Part shown: in pieces, positions 4,944 to 49,707 of the stretch | Layout of the letters: each line of letters begins with the position of its first letter | Numbering within the stretch: position 1 is the stretch's first letter | Virus record (IMG/VR): IMGVR_UViG_3300025098_000012 | Coordinates: 62,001 to 126,000 of that record | Length of the DNA stretch: 64,000 bases | Direction: 5' to 3' (one strand) | The notes under the pieces: model-generated | The model's input: the letters and a program-made list of their open reading frames with translations, nothing else | Databases searched by the model: none | Told to the model about the DNA's origin: nothing | Made by a program: the position numbers and the translations under genes

Positions 4944-5285
4944 ATGTTCACACAGATAATAAATGGTCAGCGTAAATGTGAGCTACCCGATCCTCATATA
5001 CACTCGTGGGACTACCTTAAAGGCATATTATCAGATTGTGGGTTTGCTTTAAAGCAAAGTGCTTCATCTAAAGAATACATTATGAAAGGGTGTAAAGGTC
5101 GGATTTTAATCTATGTAAAGTTTACTAATAACACCCAATGCAAAGTTGTATTCGTTAGTAAGAGTGAAAGTCATGAGTCGCTAGAGCTAGAATGGGATCA
5201 TCGGACTAAGTATCGTCAAAACGGTGATCTTGTACTAGCCTCTATCAGACAGGTTTGGTTCTCTCAGCCCAAACTCTCCGAATGA
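4944..5285 (+). CDS. Member of the NG.R / GF / IR.VW paralogue family
   Basis: IINGQRK...LSDCGF...SIRQVW. Confidence 0.6.
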   Translation: MFTQIINGQRKCELPDPHIHSWDYLKGILSDCGFALKQSASSKEYIMKGCKGRILIYVKFTNNTQCKVVFVSKSESHESLELEWDHRTKYRQNGDLVLASIRQVWFSQPKLSE

Positions 5286-5562
5286 TCTCAAAGAAATCTT
5301 TGGACTCTCTAATAGGGTAAGAGCATTGGTTGTCGAAGCCCCAAGTGGCATTGTTCATATTAACTAGGATGAAAATCTCGGTATCTGCCAAATACCAACG
5401 CTCCACCCCTGCGTATTCACCATATTTTCTGAAGCTACTTTCGATTAAACCCACAGAGAAATACATGAGGCAAAGGTTATCTTTACCTCCTTTAAACGCT
5501 TGTAGGGATTTATCAGACCATCCTCTTTTGAAGTCGATTTTATTTGTGGCGAGAGAGATCAT
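5245..5562 (-). CDS. Member of the IR.VW paralogue family
   Basis: KRGW...IESSF...EIIRRVW; start overlaps the upstream stop (ATGA). Confidence 0.6.
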   Translation of the reverse strand: MISLATNKIDFKRGWSDKSLQAFKGGKDNLCLMYFSVGLIESSFRKYGEYAGVERWYLADTEIFILVNMNNATWGFDNQCSYPIRESKDFFEIIRRVWAERTKPV

Positions 5563-6539
5563 AGAGCTGTGTTATCCTCCTCACCTGTATCAACATCATC
5601 AAGCAACGACTTATAATAAGGCTCTGGCCCACGATCTCTAGGCTTACTAAAGTCGGGAACACTTGATGCCACTCTATCTACGGTGTTTGGAGCAGGAGGG
5701 CCTGATACGGTTTCGCTAGAACCTGCGAGCTGTTCTTGATCCATCGCTTCAAAGAAGTTGAGGTCAATGTTGGTTACAATGTGTGAGAGGTGTACCTCAT
5801 CGAGTTGCTTATTCGGATCATAAGGGGCGAGTTTAGCTGTTGTTCCAGAGAGAGCATTAAATAAGATGTCATCCCTCTCGATTAACAACTGTTCTCTTAA
5901 ATCACAGAGCTTAATGATCCTCGCTTCAAGGTTGTTCCTCAAGTGTGCGATTTCTTGTGTTGCCCATTTACGAGCATGGGAGATTACACCACCTATTTCG
6001 TCTGCTCTCGGATAGATACTTTTATTGCCCCCACCGAGCCTCCAACTAGGATACTTTAGTACAGGCAACCAACCCGATGTGTCTATCTGTTCTGACGCTT
6101 CTGTTGTGGAAGTTATAGGGTATAAGACACCACCGTATGGCTGATCATAACTCTTGTAAACATTCTGAACATTGCCTTGTGTGTCTGTTACTACAGATCG
6201 CCCTTCACCTGCTTCAACTTCACGCTCAACCCAATCATAAGAGTCTGGTCTCAAGAACATGGAGATGTCAAAGGGGTTTCCCCCTTGAGCTATATATGCT
6301 TTTAGGAGTTTGCCTATAGCCGAGTTAACATTGACTTGAAGTCCAATTCTTTTTTCAGTGCAAACTTGCTCTTCCCCCTCACCTGTTTTTTCATATGTGA
6401 TGCGTATCTCTCCTATACGATTGATCTCTTTATTGATGTAGTTGATACGATAACCAACATTCTGTCTTTGCAGTAGGACAAAGCGTCTAAACTCTAGCCA
6501 CTGTCCTCTACGAAACATACAGTTCCAACCAAAGCTCAT
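5559..6539 (-). CDS. Probable virion structural protein
   Basis: 326 aa, translationally coupled within the 18828-5245 operon. Confidence 0.6.
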   Translation of the reverse strand: MSFGWNCMFRRGQWLEFRRFVLLQRQNVGYRINYINKEINRIGEIRITYEKTGEGEEQVCTEKRIGLQVNVNSAIGKLLKAYIAQGGNPFDISMFLRPDSYDWVEREVEAGEGRSVVTDTQGNVQNVYKSYDQPYGGVLYPITSTTEASEQIDTSGWLPVLKYPSWRLGGGNKSIYPRADEIGGVISHARKWATQEIAHLRNNLEARIIKLCDLREQLLIERDDILFNALSGTTAKLAPYDPNKQLDEVHLSHIVTNIDLNFFEAMDQEQLAGSSETVSGPPAPNTVDRVASSVPDFSKPRDRGPEPYYKSLLDDVDTGEEDNTAL

Positions 6540-8959: not shown

Positions 8960-9152
8960 TGGGGTCTACCTTTCTCTTTTTCTTTTGTAGTTCCCACTTA
9001 GCGAGTGCTTGTTCGAGGACAGCTAAGTTACCTAAGTCCTCTTGTAGTTTACCCTCATAGTGTGCTTGAAGCGTCCTTAAGTTTTCTAGGAGCTTCCCTA
9101 CCTCAGTGCCATTAAGGTTTGGCTCTTCGGGTGTCTTTTTCCACTTACTCAT
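8952..9152 (-). CDS. Small coiled-coil protein
   Basis: Overlap-coupled to both neighbours. Confidence 0.65.
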   Translation of the reverse strand: MSKWKKTPEEPNLNGTEVGKLLENLRTLQAHYEGKLQEDLGNLAVLEQALAKWELQKKKRKVDPNG

Positions 9153-12100
9153 TTGATGTCCTCCAATGCTGTATCATCGGGGTTGCTAAGATCCACTCTG
9201 CTAAGTTTAGACAGAGTGCCATTTACTTGATCAGTACGAACAGAAATCCATGCGTACCTACTATCCCTAGCGTTCATAGAAGATATATCATTTTCAAGCA
9301 CAGTCGGGATGCCATCTTCGGGTAAACCATAACCCTCATCTGCCATCTTTGGATCTTCAATCAACATCCTACGATCATATACAGATAGGCAAGTCTCGTT
9401 GTTCTCAAAAGGCTTACTCGCTTTATTCCCTAAGATACTTTGTAATAAAAGATCATTCGAGGGGTGGCTATTGTCTGTAATGCCTACATTATCAATCAAT
9501 TCCTCTGCTTCATATTGCGACCAAGTGTAAGGCTGAGTAGGGAGCTGATTAAATGAACGAATGACCTCAACCCATGAGAGCGTCCTTTCCCTAAAGAATA
9601 AGAACGATCCAGCTAACGATTCCCCAAGTGTGGTTCTGCGTCTAAGGATACGATAAGAGAAAGGATGGATTGAGTCATTGGTTGTCGCATAAGAGCTACC
9701 TACAATGTCAGATGTGACACGCAAAGGTTGAGCGTCATCCCCATTAACAGAAGGCAAGAGCTTATAAGTCGAACGAGATGTGCCACTATCTCCTGCATAA
9801 AACTCTACTTCAAGCGTGTTAGCGTCATCAACAGATACGACCTTATAAGCACCTCGATTGTCATCAAGTGAATTAGGTAGACCCTGCGTACCATCTCCAT
9901 TATCACCTTGTGGTGATGCTCCGTACTCTGTCGGATTAGAACCTGCCAAAGCACCTTGAGGGTCGATCACTAAGAAATCTCCCTCTGCAACACCTAGAGC
10001 AATGAAGTTAGCGTTGGTGTCGGTGAGTTTATCTTCTTCAATGACAGAGATGCCAGCAACAGGGTCGGTGGAATAAATCTCTGTAAAACCATGTTCGATA
10101 AATTGATCGAACGCTTGGAGTTCGGGGATAAGAGGAACACGAGTGATGACCTTAAAGACATCGTTATTTGAAACAGCCGAGACAGCACCTCTGATCACTG
10201 AGCATTTAAGCGTTGCCCCGACCTCAAGCACTCGTAAATAAAGTGTCTCTTGGTTAGAATCATTAACGCACTGTACTTGATCACCTACTGATACCACATT
10301 CGCAAAGTCTCCCACCTGTGTATCTGTTCCACCACTAGCATCAAAGACACCTTCACCATCAACTGTGCGAGGTGTAAGCGTGGCTACACTGTTAGCATAG
10401 ACTACGCTATCTACTCGACCTACTCGTTGCTCATAAAGGTATCGGAAACCCTCGAACGCATAGATGAGTTTAGAGAACACATCTGTAAATCGCCTAAGCC
10501 TACGGACAGTGAAGTTCACCTCCTCGTAGAAATCCCAAGCTGGTTGAGGTAGGTTTGTTAGGGTGGACTCAATCGGGGATCGGACTTGGCTTGACCCATC
10601 GGCAAACTCAACTGGAGTATTCCCTGTGTAGTCTCTCAAGAGTCGAGGGAATGTAGGATCAAGATAGATACCTGCATCCAACTTAACTGTTAAGGTGATG
10701 GTGTCGTTAGGGGATAAGAAAGGTTTACCGTAGTTTTGACCCCCACTATCTACGATGTCGGGGTAGAGATTAGCATCGCTGACATCTAGTGTTATGTGTG
10801 TGACTAGGCCATTCTCTCTTACTACCCCACTTTCAGAAAAGGCATTTGTCGTACCAGTACGACCACCACCTACGGTCATCTGTAAGGTTAGGTCTACCCC
10901 AAAGGAAGAATATAAGCCATCTTTCGCCAAACCTGTATTCCCTAAGTTGAAAGGTATCTTAGTCACCCCTCCAATGACTTGGCTATACTCACCTAAAATT
11001 GTATTCAAAGCAGTAGCGTCAGCGATAGCTGTTCCATCAGCATATTCACATGGAAAAACCAAAGTCATATCAGAGTCAGATATGAGGTTGTAATCGACTT
11101 TAATGATAGAGACTCCAAACACAGGGTCTTTAACGAGAGCTGAAGTTGAGTCTAATGTTGGAGTGGGAGTATTAGTGTAGTTATCATTTAATATGATGTA
11201 GATAGAGCCAGTGGTTGTGTCGCTAAAGTATTGTGTGAGGTCAGCAACATCCGTAGTTAAAACACCTGTGGCTGTGTCTAGGCTTACAACTTTAGGGAAC
11301 TGTACTGTAAGGACTTGGCTTGTCCCCAATGTCTCTGTGATTTCTGTGTTTATATCGGGGTCGATAGCATCTAAGACCCGATGCGTACCTGCATTATGTC
11401 CGTTCTCGATGTAAAGAAGATCACCTGCGAGGACTTGGGCTGTTGATCCATGTAATGGGGTCACATTACGAAGTATGCCTTTGACACTATCCCCTACGAT
11501 TACAGGATTAGCAGGGTCTGTGCTGTCAACCTCAATCAATCCAGACCGAGCAGATCCTTTTAAGATCGTGTCGTCTTCATCAACTTCTGAGCCAATGAAG
11601 ATGGACATAGGGTCATTGATTCGAGAGATCCCTTCAAGATGCTTTGGTCTTAATGTAGTGCTGTTAACAGACGAGAAATCAAAAGTTCCGTCATTCACAT
11701 CGGAAGTGATTGTGCCTGTATTAACTCCACCTTCCTCTTTAATAGCAAGCGTTGTTCCCTCAATGATTAGTTTTTGATCTGTATCTGCACCACCAGTCAA
11801 GTCGATGGTTGGGTCTGGATCTATCTCTATGACTGCATGGGGGACTCTATTTGTAGGGAAAACAACATCTATACGATTATTAGAAATGACAGCATTGCTC
11901 TTAACAGAGAGTCGATAGCTACTAGGTCGCATGACCCCATTCTGTTCTTGCGTAAATATATAGCTCGTACTACCTGGAATATAGACAGGGTTATAAAAGT
12001 GATTTACACTATCCCAATAACTATCAAAGAGCCATGACTGCATATCAGTAGGGTCAGCCCAAGTCTCTGTAGCAGGGTCGAATGGGTTAGGTACTGGATC

Positions 12101-15100
12101 TTGAACTACGGTTAGTTCACTAGGCATTGTGGCAGAAACTGAAAGATTGGGTACGGTTGTCACTGCGTTAGTAAGCTCATTTTTTAGTTTTACCGTCCAA
12201 CTCGCACCATCATATTCAAAGATAAATGAATGAGCGTTTTCATAAGGAGCTGTGGAATTTCCACCGAAGTTATGGACATGGAGAGTGATCTCTAAACCTG
12301 TTGATGGATTGTTAAACAGTTCCTGTATCGTGGCATGATAAAAGTAAATCTTTAACTCGGATCTGTCATACAGACCATTTTGTGCGTTTAAGGGCCAATC
12401 TTCTTCAATGAAGATACCATTAGGGAACTGCCTAAAATCTGCCTGTAAGTTTTGTATCGTACATGACACTTCACCAGGTGATGTGTGTGCAGGAGGTAAG
12501 ATTTCTGTCCCATTGATCTCGGCAATCTCAAGAACACCTGTGGAAGCACTTGAGTCGGGCTTCAAGATCAAAAGGTCGCCCTGTCTAGGTGCTTGCTCAC
12601 AAATGCCATTCAATAAAGAGAAATCTTCATTCGTGGTGATGACATCAGAACCAATACTAGCTGTACCTCTAGCCTCATCGGGATAAGCATATTCATCAAC
12701 ACCCGATATGGCATTGGATGTCTGTACCTGTAGTGCATCTAAAGCAGGTGGGATCTGAGGTAATAGATCCCTTTCACTAAACCGACTCTTATAAGGGATG
12801 GACTCATCACCTGTGTCGTCAACAGCTTCGCCATCAAGGGCAGGGTATCTAAAAGGTACTGTCTCTGTGTAAAGGAACTCAACAGATCCCTCTAAAGCTA
12901 ACCCACTCGCAGGAACATTCTGACCTACGATTTCTTTGACAGGCCAGTTGGGTTCACTGATACTAGGGAGGCTTATATCAACAATCTCACCTGTAGATGA
13001 CTTTAGCCCGATGTCAGATCCAACCCTAAAGACTGTAGACGGTGAACTATCATCATCAAGATCACGAGCAAAAGACTCAATAAGAGTATCACCACGCTTC
13101 GGTGGGTTTTCAACCAACGACTCGCCATTGATCTTGAGAGTGAATACACTCCCCTTCAAGACAACATAGCACCCACTAACGATAGCTTCTACCTTAGCGT
13201 TTCTTGGCTCGGATTGTAGAGATAAGGGAGGGAATAAACCTAACTCAAGGAGGGTCGCTTGCTCGGCTGTGTTCAACACATTATGGAACTCTCCACCATT
13301 ACGACTGATCCTAACCTTCGAGTTGGTTTGCAGACCATTAAAGGTTCGGTCTACATTCCCTACAAGGGCATCAGCAACCTCACCCCCTTCACTCACAAAC
13401 TGAGTCGTATCTGGTAATCCTGTTGAGGGATCAATCGGAAACTCATCGAGAGGAACAGCAGATAAGATGAATGTGGGTTTACCTGCTGTCTCAGCAACAG
13501 AGGGATAACCATTCAGTGAGAAATCGTACACCCTAAAGCGAGCAGATCTACGACTCACCACAGGTAGCGATGAAATGTTCTCTATTTGCCCTAGAGCGTT
13601 GTTTTGAGCGTTGGCTATTGTGATACCATTGGTCGAGCTATCTAACGCTCCAGGATTGCGATATGAGTACATTCTCGTACTAGTAGGGAAGAGTCTACTG
13701 AATCTATGTTTATTCCACATAGGAGAATAAACAGGATCGTACTCTACACGCACATAAGGAAAGCCTGCATCAAAGTCAAAGACCGTCTTTTCCTTTTGAC
13801 GAATGAGGACATAATCATCCATCTCGTTCTCAATGAGTGGACGCTGTTGTTCAAGGATTGAAGCCAACACCTTTGCTTCGGGTGGCTCTCCATTGATCTT
13901 AATCGTATCTTCTGGTGTCGGATAATGATTGGAAGGATTAAGGGGAGTTAAAAACTCCATGCTCACATAACGAGGGTAAATCTCCCTCGTGATATGATCT
14001 TCCATACCTGGTGAGATCCAATCACCTGCTGTTAATAAGTTAAACTTAAATGATCCATCGGCATCTCCAACCACTTTCCCTGTGGTTGTAGAGAGGATGT
14101 CATCAATAGGTTGAACATACCCATTGTAAAGATTGATCCTAGAGCGAGCGACCACATCATTCGCTAGTAAGCCATAAACCCCAATCGCCTTACCTTGTGA
14201 TGTAGGTGAGGAGACAACTAACTTCCCTCCCGAACCTGTATCTTGATTGAGACTTTGTTGAAGCTCATTGGCGATTTCTGATGAGTACGCATCCTCATCT
14301 GCAACCCTTACTTGGAAGGTATCTGGTGAGGAAACAACACAACTGACATTCAACCCTAATCCATCGTATTCTTCGGGAGTCTTTGATTGATTAAAGATCG
14401 CTTTGTATGTGGGTTTACTTACTCGACCTCCTAAGAGAGTAAATGGTTTTACTGCACTCAACGCTGTGTGTAGCAAATAATAACTAACTTGAGGTCTTAC
14501 ATCATGACCATTCTTGAGGTCGATTAAACCTGCTTCGGAGTTAAAATTGTAGTCCTCATTAAGAGTTAAAAGCCTACCTCGACCAAGCGTGTGGTTGTAT
14601 TTGATGATCTGAAAACTCTCGGTATCGACAATACCTGTCGTAAGGGTAAGGCTTGTGTCTCCCTCAATCAAGACAGGTCTAAACGAGACATGGAAATCAT
14701 TGGTTGAGATGAAGTCATGCCCCGATGTGAAACCCTCGACTGTGACTTTGGTCATACCAGTTACATCATCAAGACCTACCACTACGACCCGATAAGGTGT
14801 GCCTTGTAAAACCACAATCGACTTAGCCTTAATGAAGTCTCTGTAATCACCCTGTATCAAGATGTCTGGACTCTTAGGCTTGGATGTTACATTCGCATTA
14901 TTTACCGTCCTAAAGGCATACGAGCTAGTCGTTCCCCCATAGGTGAATGAAGGCACATTGAGATAAGCAATCATCTCTGTCTCTATGTTCACCCTTGCAG
15001 GAGGACTTACATCAATACTGCTCGCACTCACAGATACAACATTGAAAATCTGTGTCCCGACATAAATCAAATCCCCTGCACCTAAGATACTCGTAAAGTC

Positions 15101-18100
15101 TCTTTGGACTGACAAAGATGTTGCCCCTTTGTCAATCTTGTACTTAGGAATCACCATCCCACTTGATGTCCGAACTGTGCCATCTCCTCCGTTAGACTTT
15201 AAGGTCGTATAAGACACTTTCACAGATGTGGTACTCGCCACCTCAAAAGAGAAGCGTATTGTGTCTTGGCTGATACTATAAAGACTTGCGTTAATTTGTT
15301 CAGGTCCTACAAACACTGTCGGTGTGGCTAATAACTCTACTTCTTTACCTGTAGGGTTGTAGGTGAACTGAAAACCATCCACCCTTGTCGCTTCTTCTTG
15401 AATGACTACAAAGCCCATCGCTTCAATGACACGAACACCATTAGGATCATCTGTCGGTGTGTAAGATACCTCTACACCAACACCCTCCTCTAAAGGATCT
15501 TCAAAGCTGATTGCACCACTAGTTGCTTCAAATCTTGGGTTCGCTAACAGCTCTAAGAAATCATCAAAGGGATCGGGATCAAATGGGGTCGTGAGCGTTA
15601 AACTCAAATCCATCTCGGCTGTATCTACCAAGCCACTACGAGGCTTCCTTACAAAGACCACCTCACCATCTACCCAACTGCTGTTCGCTACTCCCATAGG
15701 GCTTTCAAAAACAACCCTGTTATCTGTGACTGTAAAACCCTTCTCTACATTCTCACCTTCTTTGGTATGACCGACACCTACTTCGTATTCTATTTCTCCT
15801 ACCTTAATGCGATATGATCCACTCGTGTAATGATCTCCACTCAACTCGTAAGGAGATAATAACACCTCGTCCCTTAACACAGTTAAAGGATATGCGTCAT
15901 CTCCCTTACGGATAAACAAAGTTGAGCTAGGCAACACCTTGTCAAAAGCAAGCGTTCCATACACCTTGTATATCTCTACTGCCTTACGCTCCAACACAGG
16001 TAGATCATCTAAAATCTCTCCCACTACCTTTGTAGGATCTGGTGTCTCCGTTTCCTCTAACCCCTCTCTATACCCTCTGTAAATCTTCCATCTCCCAAGC
16101 TGAATACCCAACGCTGAACTAAGCGTAAGCACACTCCCTGTGATCAACTCAATCTTAAAATAGTTTAATCCGTCATAAAAGAAATCACCCTGTCTCACCA
16201 AACTGAGATCCAACCCCAAGTCTAAATCGACCCCTGTTAATGACCCAACCTTTTGCCCCGATAAGACCTCTGAACCTAAACGATTGATTAAACGAGCTTG
16301 ACCCTCTAACCCATCACTCGGCAAGTCATAGTCAACCCCTTCTGTTAAAGGCTGAGTCGAGATAGTACCGTTCAACTGCTCTTGGGTGATCGTGATAGAT
16401 GTCGTACCTACCCTTAATCCAGATCCCAATGCCAAGCGTGATGTCTCTTGGTTCACCTTAGAACTTACTGTGCGACCTACAATCCAATGAAACCCATTCG
16501 GGTTGCCACCAAATGATGTCTCTATGTCCGTTTCCCCAAGTACCTTATCTCCTATCTTGAAAAACTTGCCGGCTTCATAACCTGTGAAATCAAAGCGTGG
16601 CTCAAACTGTAAAAACTGAAACGCTGTGCTACCACTTATGTCGGCTACCTTCTCCTCATCAAAAGAATAATAACCCTTGACTGATGAACGAGTTAAAACA
16701 AACTCAAGCCCTGTCTCCAAACTCGAACTCGGCACAAGACCAATAGACCTTAATGACTCAAACTCTCCTGTCGTTGATGGATGATCTACAACAGATCCAG
16801 AGTCCACTACCAAATAACCGTCTACTACTGAGACTCCCGAACCTACCACATTCTCCCCTGTAAACGATACCACTCCACCGTCCACCTTAAATGAACCACT
16901 CTTGCCCGATAAACCCAAAATGCTCATGTGCCTTAATCCCCCTCTGCTTAAAGCTACATGACCACCGAAAATCTTCTTCGTCTGATTAGACCAAGCACGA
17001 CTCAATACAACACTCGTTGTGCCTTGTACTAAATAACCACGATGGACTGATAGCCTCTTAGGGAGCTTCTCTACTAACTCCACAGGTAATGTGCGACCTA
17101 ACTCCACTAAACGAACATACATTCGCTCATATCTGTAATCCCACTTCAAACCCACTCCACTAGGTCTAAATGAACTCGCCACTCCACTAGGCTCTAATCC
17201 CGAACCATCTGGTATATCCATCTTCTCTACTAATGTTAAACCATTTACTCCTGCTCCCACACCAATAGGGGCATCACATAAAACCAAACCATCATAAATC
17301 ACAGGTGAGCTAGATAAAATCTTTCCACTGTCTAACGCTACCTTCACCACACCATATTCTGCGTCTACTAAATCACCCTCTGTCGCTACATACACCACAT
17401 CACTGTAGCCATATCCTGCGACTCTCAATAAAGGGTACTCATTTAATCTCGGCTGTGGCGATAAATAGTCCGACACCCCTACAACATTCGACTCAAATCC
17501 TCCAAGAGATCCAGATATATACAACACCTCCTTACCCACATGATCACTGCCATCCTTAAATAAAACCTTGCCCGATGGATTTAAGACCACACCCTCTGCT
17601 CCATTACTAAACGCACCATCTTCTTCTCCCTCCGCTACTACAGGGAAATCATCTCCATTTATCTCAAATACTGTGACTGACGCATCAGCTACATTACCAC
17701 CTCCTATCCTTAACTCTCCCTCCAATCCTGCTATGATGTCATCCTCACCACCTACCACCCCAACTACAATACCAGATCCTCCCCTTAATAATGACCAACC
17801 CCTGTTCTCATAATCAAATCTAACCCTACTCGCATCATTACGAGTCCACCAAAATAATCCACCACATACTCCCGAACCCTCCACACTATCCAAATTATCA
17901 CGAGCTGAATGAACCACCGTACCACCAAAGAAATGATCTAACGCAACACCATTCTCATCAAGCACCGAACTTAACCATACACGACTGTTCGTTAAGTAAT
18001 AATAGACTCCATCAATCGCTGTCTCAAATAACTTCTCAAAACTAACATCCACACTCTCAACACCTATCTCTCCATCTCCACTAGAAATCAAAGCATAAGA

Positions 18101-18262
18101 GTCTACACCTGTATTACCTATCTCATATAGATCACGACCTACACGCTCCCAACGACCATCTACTTGAACAACACTCCCATCCACTACTCGTAAACATAAA
18201 CCAGTAGATGAAGCATTACGCTCTCCACTACGAACATCTAATATAATACTTCGTGAACTCAT
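9149..18262 (-). CDS. Giant (3037 aa) beta-rich virion structural protein (baseplate/tail-associated)
   Basis: Uninterrupted 9.1-kb ORF rich in V/G/S/T/D; recurring GD.L.I...G...V motifs. Confidence 0.7.
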   Translation of the reverse strand: MSSRSIILDVRSGERNASSTGLCLRVVDGSVVQVDGRWERVGRDLYEIGNTGVDSYALISSGDGEIGVESVDVSFEKLFETAIDGVYYYLTNSRVWLSSVLDENGVALDHFFGGTVVHSARDNLDSVEGSGVCGGLFWWTRNDASRVRFDYENRGWSLLRGGSGIVVGVVGGEDDIIAGLEGELRIGGGNVADASVTVFEINGDDFPVVAEGEEDGAFSNGAEGVVLNPSGKVLFKDGSDHVGKEVLYISGSLGGFESNVVGVSDYLSPQPRLNEYPLLRVAGYGYSDVVYVATEGDLVDAEYGVVKVALDSGKILSSSPVIYDGLVLCDAPIGVGAGVNGLTLVEKMDIPDGSGLEPSGVASSFRPSGVGLKWDYRYERMYVRLVELGRTLPVELVEKLPKRLSVHRGYLVQGTTSVVLSRAWSNQTKKIFGGHVALSRGGLRHMSILGLSGKSGSFKVDGGVVSFTGENVVGSGVSVVDGYLVVDSGSVVDHPSTTGEFESLRSIGLVPSSSLETGLEFVLTRSSVKGYYSFDEEKVADISGSTAFQFLQFEPRFDFTGYEAGKFFKIGDKVLGETDIETSFGGNPNGFHWIVGRTVSSKVNQETSRLALGSGLRVGTTSITITQEQLNGTISTQPLTEGVDYDLPSDGLEGQARLINRLGSEVLSGQKVGSLTGVDLDLGLDLSLVRQGDFFYDGLNYFKIELITGSVLTLSSALGIQLGRWKIYRGYREGLEETETPDPTKVVGEILDDLPVLERKAVEIYKVYGTLAFDKVLPSSTLFIRKGDDAYPLTVLRDEVLLSPYELSGDHYTSGSYRIKVGEIEYEVGVGHTKEGENVEKGFTVTDNRVVFESPMGVANSSWVDGEVVFVRKPRSGLVDTAEMDLSLTLTTPFDPDPFDDFLELLANPRFEATSGAISFEDPLEEGVGVEVSYTPTDDPNGVRVIEAMGFVVIQEEATRVDGFQFTYNPTGKEVELLATPTVFVGPEQINASLYSISQDTIRFSFEVASTTSVKVSYTTLKSNGGDGTVRTSSGMVIPKYKIDKGATSLSVQRDFTSILGAGDLIYVGTQIFNVVSVSASSIDVSPPARVNIETEMIAYLNVPSFTYGGTTSSYAFRTVNNANVTSKPKSPDILIQGDYRDFIKAKSIVVLQGTPYRVVVVGLDDVTGMTKVTVEGFTSGHDFISTNDFHVSFRPVLIEGDTSLTLTTGIVDTESFQIIKYNHTLGRGRLLTLNEDYNFNSEAGLIDLKNGHDVRPQVSYYLLHTALSAVKPFTLLGGRVSKPTYKAIFNQSKTPEEYDGLGLNVSCVVSSPDTFQVRVADEDAYSSEIANELQQSLNQDTGSGGKLVVSSPTSQGKAIGVYGLLANDVVARSRINLYNGYVQPIDDILSTTTGKVVGDADGSFKFNLLTAGDWISPGMEDHITREIYPRYVSMEFLTPLNPSNHYPTPEDTIKINGEPPEAKVLASILEQQRPLIENEMDDYVLIRQKEKTVFDFDAGFPYVRVEYDPVYSPMWNKHRFSRLFPTSTRMYSYRNPGALDSSTNGITIANAQNNALGQIENISSLPVVSRRSARFRVYDFSLNGYPSVAETAGKPTFILSAVPLDEFPIDPSTGLPDTTQFVSEGGEVADALVGNVDRTFNGLQTNSKVRISRNGGEFHNVLNTAEQATLLELGLFPPLSLQSEPRNAKVEAIVSGCYVVLKGSVFTLKINGESLVENPPKRGDTLIESFARDLDDDSSPSTVFRVGSDIGLKSSTGEIVDISLPSISEPNWPVKEIVGQNVPASGLALEGSVEFLYTETVPFRYPALDGEAVDDTGDESIPYKSRFSERDLLPQIPPALDALQVQTSNAISGVDEYAYPDEARGTASIGSDVITTNEDFSLLNGICEQAPRQGDLLILKPDSSASTGVLEIAEINGTEILPPAHTSPGEVSCTIQNLQADFRQFPNGIFIEEDWPLNAQNGLYDRSELKIYFYHATIQELFNNPSTGLEITLHVHNFGGNSTAPYENAHSFIFEYDGASWTVKLKNELTNAVTTVPNLSVSATMPSELTVVQDPVPNPFDPATETWADPTDMQSWLFDSYWDSVNHFYNPVYIPGSTSYIFTQEQNGVMRPSSYRLSVKSNAVISNNRIDVVFPTNRVPHAVIEIDPDPTIDLTGGADTDQKLIIEGTTLAIKEEGGVNTGTITSDVNDGTFDFSSVNSTTLRPKHLEGISRINDPMSIFIGSEVDEDDTILKGSARSGLIEVDSTDPANPVIVGDSVKGILRNVTPLHGSTAQVLAGDLLYIENGHNAGTHRVLDAIDPDINTEITETLGTSQVLTVQFPKVVSLDTATGVLTTDVADLTQYFSDTTTGSIYIILNDNYTNTPTPTLDSTSALVKDPVFGVSIIKVDYNLISDSDMTLVFPCEYADGTAIADATALNTILGEYSQVIGGVTKIPFNLGNTGLAKDGLYSSFGVDLTLQMTVGGGRTGTTNAFSESGVVRENGLVTHITLDVSDANLYPDIVDSGGQNYGKPFLSPNDTITLTVKLDAGIYLDPTFPRLLRDYTGNTPVEFADGSSQVRSPIESTLTNLPQPAWDFYEEVNFTVRRLRRFTDVFSKLIYAFEGFRYLYEQRVGRVDSVVYANSVATLTPRTVDGEGVFDASGGTDTQVGDFANVVSVGDQVQCVNDSNQETLYLRVLEVGATLKCSVIRGAVSAVSNNDVFKVITRVPLIPELQAFDQFIEHGFTEIYSTDPVAGISVIEEDKLTDTNANFIALGVAEGDFLVIDPQGALAGSNPTEYGASPQGDNGDGTQGLPNSLDDNRGAYKVVSVDDANTLEVEFYAGDSGTSRSTYKLLPSVNGDDAQPLRVTSDIVGSSYATTNDSIHPFSYRILRRRTTLGESLAGSFLFFRERTLSWVEVIRSFNQLPTQPYTWSQYEAEELIDNVGITDNSHPSNDLLLQSILGNKASKPFENNETCLSVYDRRMLIEDPKMADEGYGLPEDGIPTVLENDISSMNARDSRYAWISVRTDQVNGTLSKLSRVDLSNPDDTALEDIK

Positions 18263-22747: not shown

Positions 22748-22967
22748 ACATCTCCTTATCTAGTTGTCAAAGAAAGTTAGTGGGTGGTCTCTACCACCCT
22801 CGATACTAGTACATAGATAAGGGGTTACGACTCGCCTGTGGCCTAAACAGCAAACCTCTTAAGAGTTGAGGGATTTCGGGGGTTTAGCTACTCGTAACCC
22901 CTTATCTATAGAACAGTATCGGGGCTGAATGACTCACCCCACCAACCACTCCCCAATGGAGAACAAC

Positions 22968-23350: not shown

Positions 23351-23956
23351 ATGCAGAACATCACAGCAACCAACAACACAAGCATCACTTTCACCACAAC
23401 CAAGAGTGGAAAGGCAGACCTCAAGAAAGACGGTGGTACAGTTCGTGGTCGTCATACAGTACAAGTGGATATGCTTGTGGGTACTGACCACAAGACCATC
23501 GCAGGTCTTGACCTCACTAAAGTCTTAACTGCTGACCGAGCAAAGCTCAAGACAGCTCTTGAGACTCGTGGCTTGGTCTTTACTGACCTCGACTTCACCC
23601 TCGCTCTCGATGGGGATCAGCCTCGCAAGAAGGGTCTGCTCACAGCACTTCGACAGTCAGCTACAGGCACTAACGATGATAACAAGCACTTGGAGGCTTA
23701 CTCTGATCACCCTTGTGGGGTGCGTGGGGTGAGCATCCATGATGGGACAGGTGATGTCCATGTGCGTGGTATCATCATCGGAGAGAAGATCATCTCGGCT
23801 GACCCAAACGGTGATGCGAGAAAGACCAAGAGTGGTCTTCATGTCCAACTCAAGAACGCTATCAGCAAAGAGTTGGATCTTACCACTCGCAAGTGGAGAC
23901 AGTACAAGCTCCCTGCTTCTGCGACCGTAAATGGGGTTGACAACCCTACCCTCTAA
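23351..23956 (+). CDS. Hypothetical protein, paralogue of 21146-21667
   Basis: Motif plus SD AAAGGAGA. Confidence 0.8.
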   Translation: MQNITATNNTSITFTTTKSGKADLKKDGGTVRGRHTVQVDMLVGTDHKTIAGLDLTKVLTADRAKLKTALETRGLVFTDLDFTLALDGDQPRKKGLLTALRQSATGTNDDNKHLEAYSDHPCGVRGVSIHDGTGDVHVRGIIIGEKIISADPNGDARKTKSGLHVQLKNAISKELDLTTRKWRQYKLPASATVNGVDNPTL

Positions 23957-24032
23957 TCCTCATCGGGTGCTTCGCTGTAACCCTTTATTTATAAGTTTAC
24001 ATCAGCCAACCATACCACTAAGGAAAGCAATC

Positions 24033-25702: not shown

Positions 25703-26055
25703 TTATGAAAAGATACACACGAAAAGTGAATGGGAAGATTGAGTGGGAGTATCACAAACTCTTACCCGATGAAGATGCTGGAGATTTGATTAGAGGTGCT
25801 TGTTTGGAGATGGGGTTTGTTCCTATTGATTCTGGAATCTACGCATTAAAGACAGACGAGGGGTTCTTAAAGGTTATTTGGCAAGGGGAAGAAAGACATG
25901 GCTGGATAGTAGAAATAAACAACTACTCCGAGATGTTTTTCATCCGCCAAAGTTTGTTCGATACCATAAGGTCGGTATGGTCACATGAGCGTAAAAACCC
26001 TTTAGCTTCACCTCCTATTTTTTCTTCAAAAGAGATCGAAGAAATACTAGGTTAA
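25699..26055 (+). CDS. Member of the IR.VW paralogue family
   Basis: KVNGKIEW...LEMGF...DTIRSVW. Confidence 0.7.
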   Translation: MIMKRYTRKVNGKIEWEYHKLLPDEDAGDLIRGACLEMGFVPIDSGIYALKTDEGFLKVIWQGEERHGWIVEINNYSEMFFIRQSLFDTIRSVWSHERKNPLASPPIFSSKEIEEILG

Positions 26056-28445: not shown

Positions 28446-28781
28446 CTACTCTGAGAGCTTCATCTTTTGGAAGAACTTTCGGGACTCCTCTAAGAAGTAC
28501 GAGATAAACTCAAGGTTGGTGATGTTTCTTTTGTACCTTGAACTATCTGACTTATATTTGTACTCAAAAAAGATGACATTATCCTCTGAAAAGAGTTGGG
28601 TGCTGAACTTATCATCTTTTGTATGTGTCCACACCTCTTTTCGATCAGTGGCTTGGAAGCCACATTCTACTACGAGTATTTTGAAGATGGATTCCCTATT
28701 AAGTTCTTCTGTCTGCGAAGTTGTGAGGTCTGGATTAGCAATCCTCACTCCGTTTTGTTTAACTGTCAGCATCGGGTTCAT
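28446..28781 (-). CDS. Member of the NG.R / GF paralogue family
   Basis: MLTVKQNGVRIANP nearly identical to the N-terminus of 46840; VECGF. Confidence 0.7.
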   Translation of the reverse strand: MNPMLTVKQNGVRIANPDLTTSQTEELNRESIFKILVVECGFQATDRKEVWTHTKDDKFSTQLFSEDNVIFFEYKYKSDSSRYKRNITNLEFISYFLEESRKFFQKMKLSE

Positions 28782-29612: not shown

Positions 29613-29664
29613 ACTCGGTTCTCCTTTCGGGAGGGGCTGTTTATATGATCTTATAGGTAAGGGG

Positions 29665-30081
29665 TTACGACCTCTTGAACTTGACTTGGTAGGTCTGCAT
29701 TGTTTCGAGGTTGGGTACAGCGTAGAACGCTTCCTTTACTTCTTCGGGTGCATCCCGAAACTCAGACCATCTGATCGTGTATGAGTGAGCGATGTACTGA
29801 TCGAAAAGATCCTCCCCGATAGCGTCCTCGATGTCGTTGATGTCTACCGACTCTAGCTTAGGTGTCGGGGGTTGCTTCTCCACCCTAGTCGTGTATTTGC
29901 CCGATGCAGACTCGATGATGAGATCTTGTTCGTCTGCCATTTCGATCAGTTCAGACTTGAAGCTCTTAAGAGACTTACCGAGTCTGTTCTGTGCTTCCCA
30001 CAGCCGAGAGGCCGCTTCGGTTCGCTCGTTGATGTCGAGGTTGGTGTCGTTCATTTGGTTCATGAGTGCGTTGAAGTTCAT
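29665..30081 (-). CDS. Hypothetical protein
   Basis: Start re-assigned after GGAGA; stop inside the motif. Confidence 0.75.
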   Translation of the reverse strand: MNFNALMNQMNDTNLDINERTEAASRLWEAQNRLGKSLKSFKSELIEMADEQDLIIESASGKYTTRVEKQPPTPKLESVDINDIEDAIGEDLFDQYIAHSYTIRWSEFRDAPEEVKEAFYAVPNLETMQTYQVKFKRS

Positions 30082-33223: not shown

Positions 33224-33313
33224 CCCCTTATCTAAGACCCTGTGTCGAGGACTGATTTTCCTCGCTTTCATATAAATACAAGACTACCCACTCACTCACC
33301 AAAGGAGATCCTT

Positions 33314-42968: not shown

Positions 42969-43610
42969 ATGACCTTGACCCAAAAAATAAACGGGGTTCG
43001 CAAGATGATCCCGACACCACATCACAAGACTGCGTACAAGACCAAAGGGTCTATGCAGTCCTGGTATGACCGACACACCAAACTTTTCACTGAGCTTGCT
43101 GAGGAGATAGGCTTTGAGGTCAGTAAAGAGACAGGCACTCTATCCTCTTTTACGGGCACTATCTTGAACATCAAGAAGAGTGGGTTTGGGGACTTTAAGC
43201 TCACCTTGAGATGGGCTAAGGATGGTTTATCTACGGTGCGTCTATGTGGCAACAGCACTGACCATACAGTCTACCCTTATCAGACATGGCGAGGGTACGA
43301 GAAGCCTCAGTCTCATAATGATGCTCACTTGGGTAACTGGTTCCTCAAGTTGATACGATTGGATTGGGTCGCTGGTAACAGACCGAACATCCATCAGATC
43401 AAGGTCGATGATGAGATAGTGTTTAGTGGCACACCAGGTGGTGGTGGTCAACGCACACGAGCTAAGGTTGTAGGGTATGGTGGAGCATGGGGTCGTAGCT
43501 ACTTCAAGGTGTCGCTATTAGAGGAGCGAGGGGTGAAGAAGATCAAACCTGTGGGAACGGTCATGGAGGTACACTATAACTGCATCATCCACCACGAGGG
43601 CAAAGCGTAA
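42969..43610 (+). CDS. Hypothetical protein with C-terminal SH3-like segment
   Basis: IKVDDEIVF..RAKVV; stop inside the motif. Confidence 0.75.
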   Translation: MTLTQKINGVRKMIPTPHHKTAYKTKGSMQSWYDRHTKLFTELAEEIGFEVSKETGTLSSFTGTILNIKKSGFGDFKLTLRWAKDGLSTVRLCGNSTDHTVYPYQTWRGYEKPQSHNDAHLGNWFLKLIRLDWVAGNRPNIHQIKVDDEIVFSGTPGGGGQRTRAKVVGYGGAWGRSYFKVSLLEERGVKKIKPVGTVMEVHYNCIIHHEGKA

Positions 43611-44025: not shown

Positions 44026-44029
44026 TAAT

Positions 44030-46767: not shown

Positions 46768-46839
46768 TGTCATTTATTTTAGAATAGCATACGAAGTAGT
46801 AACCCCTTATTTATTAACTCTTGAAAGGAGAACATTAGT

Positions 46840-47175
46840 ATGATGACACTAACAGTTAAAGACAATGGAGTTCGTGTAGCAAACCCCTCTTATAGAGGTC
46901 AGAGAGTCCACGCTAATGAGATCAAGCAGTATCATTCAACTTTACTTAAAGAGTTGGGATTTAAAAAGCAAAGCTCAAGATGGATACACAAATCAACAAT
47001 GCCCTTTAAGGCATCCTCGTTATGTGTGGTTTGGAGAGATTCTCCTCATACCTTGAGCGTACAGCGAGGAAACTTTTTAAAGCACATTGAAGTACATGAG
47101 AATGCCGACTTACATGACTTTGTGTCTAATGTTTTGCAGTCGATAAGGGATGTTTGGACAGAGGGTGCGAAGTAA
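46840..47175 (+). CDS. Member of the IR.VW paralogue family
   Basis: LTVKDNGVRVANP...KELGF...SIRDVW. Confidence 0.75.
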   Translation: MMTLTVKDNGVRVANPSYRGQRVHANEIKQYHSTLLKELGFKKQSSRWIHKSTMPFKASSLCVVWRDSPHTLSVQRGNFLKHIEVHENADLHDFVSNVLQSIRDVWTEGAK

Positions 47176-48020
47176 TGAATATGAAGCAAAGATTAGTCGA
47201 GATGATGTCAGAGATCGAAGCGATCCAAAGACAGCTTGGTTGGGTAGTAGATACAGAGGTACATAAAGAGCAGTTAAGGCATCCTATCACCGAGTATCAT
47301 GTAAATCACTATGCGTATCAGTTAGCTCGACTTAAGGACAACCTTAACACGCATGGACCAGCGAGAAGGTGTTATACTTGTAACGACAGTGGTTGGGTTG
47401 AAAATAAAGTTGCTTTTGGGTTTGTGTTTAGTGTTGTTAATAATCCATGTTCGGATTGCGATAAAGGTCGTGAGATAAAGAAGGTTCGTGATGAGAAGAA
47501 CCGTAAGGCTAAAGAGGAAGATGATGCAAGGCAGGAACAGATAAGGCTTGCAAAGGCTCAAGAGCTTGATTGGAGGATTCGACTCATTAAGGTTTGTGTG
47601 GATGATGTGATTGAACCTTGCATTCATCTTTTAGGAAGTGAAGCGATCAATATGCTCTACAAGGAGTATGAATACCTTTTTAAAAGGTGTGGTAATGCAG
47701 AGAACTGGTATCAATCAGAGCAGTACCATCTACATGGTAAAGGAGACTTTTCGATCCCTAAACTGTGGGAGAAAGAGGCTCGTCTAAATTGGGTCAGAGA
47801 GACGATACCGTTCGGACTTAAAGCCCACGAAGACTACTATGTTATAGAAAGTAATCTTCTTTTAAAGGTTGCTCATACTAAGAGGGATTTAGAGCATCGC
47901 ATTTATCAGACTTTGCCTGCTTACGCTAACTCTGATGTTCTTGTTGAGGGTTTATATAAGCAACTCCAAGAGCTTGTGGCTCAAGTGTTGAGCGAACAAA
48001 AAAATACGGAAACGAATTAG
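47175..48020 (+). CDS. Zn-finger / coiled-coil protein
   Basis: CYTCNDSG...PCSDC. Confidence 0.7.
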   Translation: MNMKQRLVEMMSEIEAIQRQLGWVVDTEVHKEQLRHPITEYHVNHYAYQLARLKDNLNTHGPARRCYTCNDSGWVENKVAFGFVFSVVNNPCSDCDKGREIKKVRDEKNRKAKEEDDARQEQIRLAKAQELDWRIRLIKVCVDDVIEPCIHLLGSEAINMLYKEYEYLFKRCGNAENWYQSEQYHLHGKGDFSIPKLWEKEARLNWVRETIPFGLKAHEDYYVIESNLLLKVAHTKRDLEHRIYQTLPAYANSDVLVEGLYKQLQELVAQVLSEQKNTETN

Positions 48021-48048: not shown

Positions 48049-48402
48049 ATGAATAAGTATTTGAAGAAGCATGATGATGGACAAGTGGACTGGTCAAAGG
48101 TGGGCTTTGAGATGTTGAATGAATTTCAAGATCTCATGATGGGAGGGCTTGATCTTTCTTGTCGCAGACTTTTGCATGAGGTGCTTGTGGCTCGTGGTTT
48201 TGAGATCAACGACATTTACTCTGAGTATTTTATATCAGACGGTGAGGGTCGTATTGTGTTTGTGTTAATGGACGATGAGTTTTTAAAGGTTGTTCGAGAT
48301 GAGGTTATTTACAACTTACCTATGCACTATGCGAGTGGGTCAGATGAGTTATGTGATTTGTGGGAAATGATCCGAAAGGCATGGAACGCAGATGCTAGTT
48401 AG
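48049..48402 (+). CDS. Member of the IR.VW paralogue family
   Basis: KHDDGQVDW...VARGF...EMIRKAW. Confidence 0.7.
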   Translation: MNKYLKKHDDGQVDWSKVGFEMLNEFQDLMMGGLDLSCRRLLHEVLVARGFEINDIYSEYFISDGEGRIVFVLMDDEFLKVVRDEVIYNLPMHYASGSDELCDLWEMIRKAWNADAS

Positions 48403-48417: not shown

Positions 48418-48672
48418 ATGAATGAGGGTAAAAGAATGATTGAGTATGATAGCGAGGGTGCTGTACCTAAGACACTATCTGGATTTTTCAGCCTCTCAGA
48501 GTTAGAGGGGAAGAACCGTATAGAGATTTCCTACAGTTATCCGAGTGGATCTTTAGTGATACATGAATTTGGTGATGTCGGATCATATCGTCTGACTTTA
48601 TTATCAGCCGAGATAGACGGTAGAGATGATCTCAAGATAACAGCGACTTACAGGGTGGAGGGTAATGACTGA
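48418..48672 (+). CDS. Hypothetical protein
   Basis: Operon member. Confidence 0.6.
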   Translation: MNEGKRMIEYDSEGAVPKTLSGFFSLSELEGKNRIEISYSYPSGSLVIHEFGDVGSYRLTLLSAEIDGRDDLKITATYRVEGND

Positions 48673-48964
48673 TCAACACACGAAGATAGCGAATGGCAAG
48701 CGTATTTGGACGAACAGTTCATTGCTCACATTGGAGCGTAAGGATCATGTCGAGATTTTTGATTTGCTTGTCTACAGTTTTTTGGAGATAGGCTTCACCC
48801 AACATTCGTATGCTCACTACACGCTAGACACCTTAGAAATATGTCTTTACAACGACAGCGTGGGTGTTTTTAAGGTCGGAGAAGATGAGGGTAGGAAGGT
48901 TCTCTACAGATCTGAGGGGATGAGAACTTTTTGGGGTGTGGTTCGGGATGTTTGGGGTTCATAG
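48665..48964 (+). CDS. Member of the IR.VW paralogue family
   Basis: KIANGKRIW...LEIGF...VVRDVW. Confidence 0.7.
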   Translation: MTDQHTKIANGKRIWTNSSLLTLERKDHVEIFDLLVYSFLEIGFTQHSYAHYTLDTLEICLYNDSVGVFKVGEDEGRKVLYRSEGMRTFWGVVRDVWGS

Positions 48965-49016
48965 TCGGAGAAATAATATAACAAGCGTTCAAATTGTGAA
49001 CAGAAAGGAATACTCA

Positions 49017-49310
49017 TTGAGATTTTTATTATGCCTACTGCTCCTGTCTGGTTGTGGCGAAGATAAGATGGAAGTTTATAACACTAGGTGTCCTCAAGTA
49101 GAGCTTGGAGAACATATTGGGTACTTGAGTATCGAGGGAGTAGACAAAAACTCGTTCGCTTACTGGGCTTGTGTAAAGGGAGACTGCACACAAGAAAAGT
49201 GGAGGGATTATCCTGTTGAGGTTCGTCCGATGGGGGATGATGTTTTGAGGGTGTGTTGTGGAGGCTCGGAACATCGAGTAGACCGAGTAAGTGTGGTAGT
49301 TATTAAATGA
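49017..49310 (+). CDS. Small Cys-rich lipoprotein
   Basis: TTG start after AAAGGA; MRFLLCLLLLSGC lipobox. Confidence 0.7.
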   Translation: MRFLLCLLLLSGCGEDKMEVYNTRCPQVELGEHIGYLSIEGVDKNSFAYWACVKGDCTQEKWRDYPVEVRPMGDDVLRVCCGGSEHRVDRVSVVVIK

Positions 49311-49350
49311 CATGAGGCTTATAGACTAGAGGAGTTAAAAGCTATGCCTT

Positions 49351-49707
49351 ATGTCTATAACAGAAAAGAAGAATGACAGACGAGTTTGGTCAGAAGGCTT
49401 TGTTTTAGCCTATGATGGATTGACTATAGAAGATCGCTATCAGAGTCTGATCTTAGGTTTAAGTGAAGCAGGCTTCGTCAAACAGGACTATACCTCTTAC
49501 TCTCCATTGAGTAAGGTGACTGATCTACAGCTAGACGGTATCATTGTTCGTCTTTATCTAGTAGAGCTGAACAATGATACAGTGATTTGTTATCGTGTGG
49601 GCTTAGAGGGTAGGATGGATAGTGATGACACCGACACTATATTTAGGCTTGGCTTAGACACGATATGGGTGGACATTCGTAGGGTTTGGGTAGGCTCAAA
49701 GTTATAG
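49351..49707 (+). CDS. Member of the IR.VW paralogue family
   Basis: KKNDRRVW...LSEAGF...DIRRVW. Confidence 0.7.
   Translation: MSITEKKNDRRVWSEGFVLAYDGLTIEDRYQSLILGLSEAGFVKQDYTSYSPLSKVTDLQLDGIIVRLYLVELNNDTVICYRVGLEGRMDSDDTDTIFRLGLDTIWVDIRRVWVGSKL

What the first reader, a model, noticed from the sequence alone, without database searches (positions are those of the whole stretch)
4944..49707. Dispersed eight-member family of ~100-120 aa unknown proteins (NG.R.W ... L.E.GF ... IR.VW)
Seen: members at 4944, 5245, 25699, 28446, 46840, 48049, 48665 and 49351 share most of an N-terminal hairpin motif, a central GF and a C-terminal IR.VW helix, while diverging strongly elsewhere. I do not recognise the family. 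Inference: an expanded, diversifying family of this kind may bind variable host targets (anti-defence or decoy role).
Basis: partly seen in the sequence, partly recalled or inferred. Interest (0 to 1): 0.6.

Follow-up and report, generated by a model that had tools for sequence, protein, structure and literature searches.

The report
Orphan small-protein family of huge phages
The eight small proteins really are one ancient family, with nine copies in this window and about fifteen in the phage genome, which matches no described protein family, is found only in huge aquatic phages and has no known function.

Summary
All eight ORFs are homologous: each still scores E 5e-10 to 9e-7 against a family profile built without it and its near relatives, and the most divergent subgroup matches the core with hhalign probability 97.9%, E 4e-13. 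The window holds a ninth member (42969-43610, with an extra C-terminal domain). The 226.7-kb phage record holds 15, and a complete 375.7-kb relative holds at least 14.

The window comes from a very divergent huge phage. Pfam, PHROGs, PADLOC and PDB sequences give nothing. A confident model (pLDDT 91) shows an N-terminal beta-hairpin on an alpha-beta4-alpha sandwich. Its best structural matches are weak (Z 5.0 or less: type III secretion chaperones, frataxin, HicA).

Among 1.84 billion proteins only 53 clusters match, nearly all 100-126 aa and from metagenomes; those traced lie on huge-phage contigs. The paralogs are old. Each has its own orthologs, and the two copies tested are under purifying selection (dN/dS 0.10-0.15). 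Yet the family diverges faster than the rest of the genome (63% against 87% identity) and grows by tandem duplication.

The likeliest role is a non-enzymatic binding scaffold whose copies have different partners. An anti-defence role is possible but untested.

The parts
4944..5285 (+). Family member, 113 aa. It is convergent with the next member and overlaps its 3' end by 41 nt.
   Evidence: Leave-orthogroup-out HMM E 1e-7. A 113-aa orthologue is called in the same place in 260-370 kb relatives. dN/dS 0.10.
5245..5562 (-). Family member, 105 aa. It is the last gene of the long minus-strand block (3037 aa, 66, 806, 326, 105 aa). Its start overlaps the stop of the 326-aa gene.
   Evidence: E 5e-10; dN/dS 0.15. 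Model m4e8d691d6070, pLDDT 91.
25705..26055 (+). Family member, 116 aa. It starts at the ATG; the ORF opens at a TTG at 25699. It is the last gene of a plus-strand block.
   Evidence: E 8e-9. Orthologue P0121 is 83% identical.
28446..28781 (-). Family member, 111 aa, of the divergent subgroup (no hairpin Trp, no IR.VW). It is the second gene behind the promoter-like motif at 29668.
   Evidence: E 7e-7; hhalign 97.9%.
42969..43610 (+). The family domain spans about residues 1-137 (LIRLDW at 128-133). A C-terminal extension of about 75 aa follows, possibly SH3-like.
   Evidence: HMM E 1.3e-3 to 6e-3 among 1245 ORFs, with a clean gap to the next hit. Domain table. The SH3-like reading is an Atlas lead only. 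The orthologue in G001 is 61% identical.
46840..47175 (+). Family member, 111 aa, of the divergent subgroup. It lies directly behind a promoter-like motif and a strong ribosome-binding site.
   Evidence: (E 2e-8).
48049..48402 (+). Family member, 117 aa, the most acidic (net charge -11).
   Evidence: (E 4e-10). 25 orthologue clusters.
48665..48964 (+). Family member, 99 aa, the most compact. It has no orthologue in the complete relative G001.
   Evidence: (E 1.6e-7). Model m35661c323590.
49351..49707 (+). Family member, 118 aa.
   Evidence: E 1.5e-9. 87% identical to its G001 orthologue.
46799..46816 (+). Copy of the dispersed promoter-like motif GTAACCCCTTAT(C/T)TAT, 24 nt upstream of the start of member 46840.
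   Evidence: The same arrangement stands before the orthologue in G001.
29652..29668 (-). Copy of the same motif (one mismatch). It heads the two-gene block 29481-28759 and 28781-28446.

Best explanation
This is a real protein family that I found described nowhere. Its members are small (about 100-125 aa), soluble, single-domain proteins of huge aquatic phages.

Shown:
- All copies are homologous.
- The predicted fold is an N-terminal beta-hairpin, a short helix, then an alpha-beta4-alpha two-layer sandwich.
- The signature residues lie in the hairpin, at the end of the long helix and on the C-terminal helix.
- Each paralogue is an old gene, separately conserved. The two copies tested are under purifying selection.
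- The family gains and loses copies by tandem duplication and evolves faster than the rest of the genome.
- Several copies sit behind the phage's own dispersed promoter-like motif.

Inferred:
- The signature residues (T6, K8, R13 and W15 on one face of the hairpin; F44, I94, R95, W98 and E41) form a structural clasp that holds a common scaffold together.
- The open face of the sheet and the indel-rich loops differ between copies, and net charge runs from -11 to +6.
- No catalytic-looking residue is conserved.
- So the members most likely act as non-enzymatic binding modules (inhibitors or adaptors), each with its own protein partner.
- Whether those partners are host proteins (takeover or counter-defence) or the phage's own proteins is open.
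For: Homology.

Fold: two models with the same order of elements (pLDDT 72 and 91, pTM 0.83).

No enzyme or known family:
-.
- The conserved columns hold no His, Cys, Ser or Asp pattern.

Variable surfaces:
- Charge from -11 to +6.
- In the strands, outward-facing positions vary while inward ones are kept.

Old paralogues with their own orthologues.

Purifying selection.

Faster divergence than background, and four copies with no orthologue in G001.

Tandem arrays in unrelated huge-phage contigs, with neighbours as closest kin.

Modular use of the domain, as a double copy joined by a coiled coil and as fusions with other segments.

Promoter-like motif before members.
Against: - No partner has been identified.
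- The invariant Arg with conserved Lys, Arg and Trp could instead be a shared ligand or nucleic-acid site.
- Fold matches are all weak (Z 5.0 or less), so the fold argues for no mechanism.
- Faster divergence is typical of any accessory gene.
Confidence: 0.5

Rival explanations
1. Counter-defence or host-takeover array. Each paralogue would neutralise a different host immune or housekeeping protein. Duplication and divergence would track host variation.
For: - The proteins are small and non-enzymatic, in many copies and in tandem arrays.
- Duplications are lineage-specific.
- Orthologues diverge faster than background, and 4 of 15 have no orthologue in a relative.
- One member is strongly acidic.
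Against: - dN/dS of 0.10-0.15 in the two testable copies equals that of neighbouring genes.
- Some copies are 87-92% conserved.
- Several copies sit at the ends of operons that hold very large, probably structural, genes.
- There is no similarity to any known defence-related family. PADLOC holds defence proteins, not anti-defence proteins, so this test is weak.
- The host is unknown.
Confidence: 0.2
2. Phage-internal role. The members would be assembly chaperones or minor virion proteins, each serving one large structural or ejected protein. This would resemble type III secretion chaperones, or the virion paralogue families of giant phages.
For: - The best structural match is the type III secretion chaperone SycH, and four more such chaperones appear in the list (Z 5.0 to 3.7).
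- 5245 looks translationally coupled to the block of 3037, 806 and 326 aa, with synteny kept in relatives.
- Freshwater members lie beside tail-fibre-like genes (Laminin_G_3, PA14).
- Giant phages are known to carry virion paralogue families of up to 20 members (PMC5694885).
- A two-domain member is joined by a coiled coil.
Against: - Z of 5 or less is below what orphan models usually reach by chance arrangement (notes).
- The homodimer test gave no answer.
- There is no sequence match to SPN3US, whose family B proteins are 275-500 aa.
- The 46.8-49.7 kb cluster sits among small genes of unknown function, not next to large structural genes.
- The alternation of members with other genes there is not conserved in G001.
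Confidence: 0.2
3. Nucleic-acid-binding or nucleotide-binding regulators. The conserved basic and aromatic cluster (K8, R13, W15, R95, W98) would be a shared ligand site, and the rest of the protein would tune specificity.
For: - An Arg is invariant in 116 sequences that average 17% identity, and Lys, Arg and Trp are conserved on one face of the hairpin.
- There are weak fold matches to HicA (dsRBD-like), the RNase H3 N-domain and the MotA C-domain.
Against: - Half of the members are acidic overall.
- The matches are weak.
- There is no helix-turn-helix or known RNA-binding signature.
Confidence: 0.08
4. No real family: a chance resemblance of short motifs among unrelated small ORFs.
For: Pairwise BLAST is mostly insignificant.
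Against: - Leave-out profile E-values run from 5e-10 to 9e-7.
- hhalign gives E 4e-13.
- Each copy has conserved orthologues under purifying selection.
- A common, confident fold model exists.
Confidence: 0.01

Closest known systems
Frataxin/CyaY-like and related alpha-beta(n)-alpha two-layer sandwiches (frataxin, Nqo15, copper amine oxidase N-domain, TTHA1013, YjbR)
   Same: - A helix, a meander antiparallel sheet and a C-terminal helix packed on one face of the sheet.
- These are recurrent weak hits: 4hs5_A Z 4.8 (76 residues, 3.4 A), 4jpd_A, 2fug_7, 6grr_B and 1whz.
- The Atlas search adds copper amine oxidase N-domain rows.
   Different: - No sequence similarity.
- An extra conserved N-terminal hairpin and short helix.
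- Four rather than five to seven strands.
- No conserved acidic ridge.
- Z lies below the level the tool calls meaningful.
Class I type III secretion chaperones (SycH, AvrPphF ORF1, ShcA, ExsC, SpcS)
   Same: - Small size and an alpha-beta-alpha sandwich.
- The best single match is 1ttw_A: Z 5.0, 67 residues, 2.8 A.
- A gene for a small protein placed next to genes for large proteins.
   Different: - Only residues 31-105 align.
- The chaperones have a middle dimerisation helix that is absent here.
- Dimerisation is not supported.
- No Pfam match.
Virion paralogue families of giant phages (SPN3US families A, B and C; phiKZ inner-body proteins)
   Same: A large family within one genome of a phage over 200 kb. 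Copy number varies strongly between related phages (PMC5694885).
   Different: - No sequence match in SPN3US.
- Those proteins are 275-500 aa, against about 110 aa here.
- Presence in the virion is unknown here.
Lineage-specifically expanded small binding or immunity domains in viruses (for example the SUKH/US22 superfamily; recalled from my own knowledge, not tested)
   Same: A non-enzymatic alpha+beta domain present in many divergent copies per genome, often in tandem, and thought to bind varied partners.
   Different: No SUKH-type structure or Pfam family appeared in any search. The sizes and motifs differ.

Membership tests
Any Pfam, PHROGs or PADLOC family | A significant match to the family's profile HMM | tested here: not met
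   - The eight members have no Pfam match under E 0.01 and no PHROGs match under E 0.013.
- All 116 aligned members were scanned against Pfam. No family is hit by more than 6, and the best E is 0.002.
- PADLOC gives two single hits at E 0.01 or weaker.
Frataxin/CyaY | Frataxin-like fold with a clear structural match | tested here: inconclusive
   Z 4.8, rmsd 3.4 A, 76 residues aligned. The topology is the same, but the score lies in the range the tool flags as a common arrangement.
Frataxin/CyaY | Sequence family (PF01491) and a conserved acidic ridge on helix 1 and strand 1 | tested here: not met
   No Pfam hit. Net charge runs from -11 to +6, and no acidic positions other than E41 are conserved.
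Class I type III secretion chaperones | CesT/SycH-like fold | tested here: inconclusive
   1ttw_A gives Z 5.0 over 67 residues. Four other chaperones give Z 3.7-4.3.
Class I type III secretion chaperones | Obligate homodimer | tested here: inconclusive
   The two-copy complex of the 5245 protein scored ipSAE 0.00. The tool's verdict was 'no answer', which is evidence neither way.
HicA toxins (dsRBD-like) | PF07927 match and a conserved catalytic His | tested here: not met
   No Pfam hit. No conserved His in the family alignment. The fold matches are only Z 4.4 or less.
SPN3US/phiKZ virion paralogue families | Sequence homology to the SPN3US family A, B or C proteins | tested here: not met
   The family profile found nothing in the six-frame translation of JN641803.1 at E 0.1 or better.
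SPN3US/phiKZ virion paralogue families | Presence in purified virions | not testable with these tools
   There is no cultured phage and no proteome.
Anti-defence proteins | Inhibition of a host defence system | not testable with these tools
   No anti-defence library was on hand, and the host is unknown. This needs a plating assay.

The most novel reading that the evidence does not exclude
The family is a new superfamily of counter-defence or host-takeover inhibitors specific to huge aquatic phages. It would be one conserved scaffold, copied 15-20 times per genome, with each copy shaped to disable a different host protein. The tandem arrays in other lineages would be independent bursts of the same arms race.
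Probability: 0.15. Interest if true: 0.75.

Novelty: new variant of a known kind. Interest (0 to 1): 0.45.

Why it matters
Huge phages of oceans and lakes are almost entirely unannotated. In this record about 6% of the genes (15 of about 265) belong to one family that no database names. A profile for that family now annotates 14 to 21 genes in each complete relative, and arrays in other huge-phage lineages.

The family is compact and folds confidently, and it comes as many natural variants on one scaffold. That makes it a good handle for asking what the 'dark' small genes of huge phages do. If the copies prove to have different partners, the family would be a natural library of binders. If they turn out to be counter-defence proteins, it would open a new class from uncultured marine phages. 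As it stands this is a solid new family without a function, not a mechanism.

Tried and rejected
Searches that found nothing:
- Megablast of 44-52 kb against GenBank phages found no match.
- tblastn of two members against GenBank phages found no match.
- The family profile found nothing in LR745208.1, the nearest GenBank phage by UvsX, or in SPN3US.
- Foldseek against PDB with both models, and against BFVD, gave nothing at E 0.001 or better.
- The Atlas search by shape gave TM 0.57 or less.
- The Atlas search by features gave no usable hit.
- The PDB sequence profile gave nothing under E 0.3.
- The search for related loci with the alignment failed because no stretch is conserved enough.

Tools that gave no answer:
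- The homodimer prediction for the 5245 protein returned 'no answer' and is not evidence either way.
So read laying was not used and there is no expression evidence.

Ideas rejected:
- Fixed two-gene cassettes (member plus partner) in the 46.8-49.7 kb cluster. In G001 the first two orthologues are adjacent, without the 288-aa gene between them.
- The conserved N-terminus plus L.E as a cleavable capsid-targeting leader. The N-terminal hairpin and helices belong to a confident globular model.

Timing the promoter class:
- I looked for RNA polymerase, capsid, sheath and terminase families in G000 and G001.
- The only hit was one weak sheath match in G001.
- A homologue search for the 405-aa gene at 33242 returned only unnamed proteins.
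- The PDB sequence search of the 3037-aa, 806-aa and 405-aa proteins found nothing useful.
Full report
**What the window is.**
- The window is bases 62001-126000 of a single 226,698-bp virus record. CheckV rates it 73% complete. G+C is 43%.
- It carries phage replication and recombination genes: a UvsX-like recombinase, a sliding clamp, a RuvC-like resolvase and a PD-(D/E)XK nuclease.
- Most of its large proteins match nothing, including a 3037-aa ORF.
- No GenBank phage is similar at the DNA level. The nearest by UvsX is an unannotated 485-kb uncultured phage, at 51% identity.
- Close relatives are metagenomic contigs of 260-376 kb, several from marine surveys including Tara. One is a 375,691-bp IMG/VR record rated 100% complete, here called G001.

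- Most have a Shine-Dalgarno-like sequence before an ATG. The third starts at the ATG at 25705.
- Pairwise BLAST alone would not carry the claim, since only three pairs are significant.
- Profile methods do carry it. Starting from 48665 and 49351, an iterated HMM search of all 1245 ORFs of at least 40 aa pulled in 5245, 48049 and 25699. It also found three copies outside the window, at genome positions 179322, 179680 and 180014.
- The pair 28446/46840 and the member at 4944 ranked 9th, 11th and 12th of 1245 even before they were added. They became significant afterwards.
- The strictest test removed each member, all its BLAST neighbours and their neighbours from a 116-sequence alignment, then rebuilt the profile. 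Every one of the 12 stand-alone members still scored E 5e-10 to 9e-7.
- Profile against profile, the divergent subgroup (28446, 46840, g154463 and their orthologues) matches the core with probability 97.9% and E 4.3e-13 over 106 columns.

**How big the family is.**
- With the full profile there is a clean gap between 15 hits (E 0.006 or better) and noise (E 0.28 or worse).
- Twelve are stand-alone proteins of 99-124 aa.
- Three are longer:
  - Window 42969-43610 (213 aa) is the domain plus an extension of about 75 aa. It is a ninth member in the window.
  - g201179-201775 (198 aa) is a 50-aa extension plus the domain.
  - g197126-198166 (346 aa) is two copies of the domain joined by a coiled-coil linker.
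- The complete relative G001 has 14 strong and about 7 weaker copies in syntenic places.

**Relatives elsewhere.**
- The word-index search found 101 metagenomic proteins. None has a name or a Pfam domain.
- Each is a 45-90% identical orthologue of one particular paralogue.
- The exhaustive profile search of 1.84 billion cluster representatives found only 53 clusters at E 0.001 or better.
- Nearly all are 100-126 aa. One of the two long exceptions is the orthologue of the two-domain protein.
- Distant members with no BLAST hit to this genome carry the same hairpin and E.GF motifs.
- They lie on other huge-phage contigs. A 312-kb contig has six copies within 3.3 kb. Other contigs have two or three copies in tandem next to tail-fibre-like genes.

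**Structure.**
- With 12 sequences AlphaFold2 gave a middling model of the 48665 protein (pLDDT 72).
- With 116 sequences it gave a confident model of the 5245 protein (pLDDT 91, pTM 0.83).
- Both have the same order of elements: hairpin 6-15, helix 17-25, helix 28-41, four strands, then a C-terminal helix.
- Foldseek found nothing in PDB or BFVD.
- The exhaustive aligner gave a best Z of 5.0 (SycH). Below it came a run of frataxin/CyaY, Nqo15, YjbR, HicA, copper amine oxidase N-domain and Mediator subunits at Z 3.5-4.8.
- That is less than such orphan models usually reach.
- The common denominator is a helix, meander sheet, helix two-layer sandwich. That names a fold class, not a function.
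- The N-terminal hairpin has no counterpart in these matches.

**Conservation pattern.**
- Conserved columns are T6, G11, R13 and W15; L39, E41, G43 and F44; an aromatic at 56, L58 and V/I65; and L90, W/F91, I94, R95 and W98.
- R95 is invariant in 116 sequences whose mean column identity is 17%.
- In a two-residue-turn hairpin, residues 6, 8, 13 and 15 share one face, and I94 and W98 share one face of the last helix.
- I infer that these residues, with F44 and E41, clasp the hairpin to the helices.
- This is inference from sequence, because I had no model coordinates.
- No conserved residue looks catalytic.
- Net charge runs from -11 to +6.
- In the strands, alternate outward-facing positions vary even within orthogroups.

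**Evolution.**
- Between the window and two 260-370 kb relatives, 4944 and 5245 have dN/dS of 0.10 and 0.15. Their neighbours have 0.05-0.20, and non-coding shadow frames give 0.35 to above 3.
- So these are real genes under purifying selection.
- Against G001, 11 of the 15 members have reciprocal best hits with median identity 63%.
- The rest of the genome has a median of 87% (Mann-Whitney p = 7e-4), and other small genes 86% (p = 0.006).
- Four of the 15 members have no orthologue, against 15% of other genes.
- In distant lineages tandem neighbours are each other's closest relatives, at 27-45% identity.
- The family is therefore old. It is kept copy by copy, yet it turns over and diverges faster than the core genome.

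**Context and expression signals.**
- A 17-nt motif, GTAACCCCTTAT(C/T)TAT(A/G), occurs 45 times in the record and 67 times in G001, counting copies whose first 12 bases have at most one mismatch.
- It occurs on both strands, usually just ahead of a start codon. A short GC hairpin, or the sequence CTCTTGAAAGGAGAAC before an ATG, often follows.
- It stands directly before 46840 (and before its G001 orthologue) and before the 198-aa member.
- It heads the short operon that ends with 28446. It also lies upstream of the blocks that end with 25705 and 5245.
- The window's replication genes (50.7-62.7 kb) have none.
- I could not tell whether this is an early or a late class.
- The alternation of members with other genes at 46.8-49.7 kb is not conserved in G001, so these are not fixed two-gene cassettes.

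**Verdict.**
- The family is new in sequence and weakly anchored in fold space. So far it is confined to huge aquatic phages.
- The best-supported mechanism is a conserved, non-enzymatic scaffold whose copies bind different partners (confidence 0.5).
- The anti-defence reading (0.2) and a chaperone or virion reading (0.2) are both open. A shared nucleic-acid or ligand site is less likely (0.08).
- No alternative genetic code was used.

Noticed in passing
window 3480-46816, 31 copies (for example 22894-22910 +, 33220 +, 46124 +, 46799 +, 20747 -, 29668 -); 45 copies in the whole record: A dispersed promoter-like motif, GTAACCCCTTAT(C/T)TAT(A/G). It occurs on both strands, usually just ahead of a start codon, and often in divergent pairs. 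TAGTGT or TAGTAT often follows, then a short GC hairpin or a strong ribosome-binding site. It is conserved in the 375.7-kb relative (67 copies). The window's replication-gene region (50.7-62.7 kb) has none. No phage RNA polymerase could be recognised. The 12-mer is in no paper of the library.
   Followed up: partly
window 52467-52790 (+) and 62799-63200 (+); ten more copies elsewhere in the record: A second dispersed family. At least 12 proteins of 96-584 aa share little beyond a leader of about 22 aa, MRRSASE(I/T)IRNLEQRIARLE, at or near the N-terminus. The sequence after it differs between members. It looks like a targeting or propeptide leader, like the capsid-targeting sequences of T4 and giant-phage head proteins (PMC5694885). 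This was not tested.
   Followed up: partly
window 9149-18262 (-): A 3037-aa ORF with no Pfam, PHROGs or PDB sequence match. It heads a conserved block (3037, 66, 806, 326, 105 aa) that relatives also carry. GC skew reaches -0.43 at 16-18 kb.
   Followed up: partly
window 4944-5562: Two family members are convergent and overlap by 41 nt at their 3' ends. The same arrangement is kept in relatives of 260-376 kb.
   Followed up: yes
window 47154-48020 (+): A 288-aa gene with Cys-rich, zinc-finger-like motifs (a weak hit to the DnaJ CXXCXGXG domain). It lies between two family members here. It is absent between their orthologues in G001, so it is an insertion or a deletion.
   Followed up: partly
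window 26535-26984 (inside the ORF 26505-27254, -): Three tandem copies of a 150-nt unit (100, 88 and 61% identity to the reference copy), which gives a protein with internal 50-aa repeats.
   Followed up: no
window 23931-25268 (+): A 445-aa protein with long acidic Pro-Val-Glu-rich repeats. They show up as DNA repeat families at 24345-24828.
   Followed up: no
window 59916-60794 (+): A 292-aa protein with an adenylate/guanylate cyclase catalytic domain (Pfam E 1.2e-6, above the curated cut-off).
   Followed up: no
window 48936-49310 (+) and 50080-50439 (+): Small ORFs interleaved with the family cluster carry hydrophobic N-termini, and the first contains a lipobox-like Leu-Ser-Gly-Cys. They may be lipoproteins or secreted proteins.
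   Followed up: no
genome 197126-198166 (L003:1126-2166, +), outside the window: A 346-aa protein made of two copies of the family domain joined by a coiled-coil linker of about 100 aa. A 329-aa orthologue exists in another phage.
   Followed up: partly
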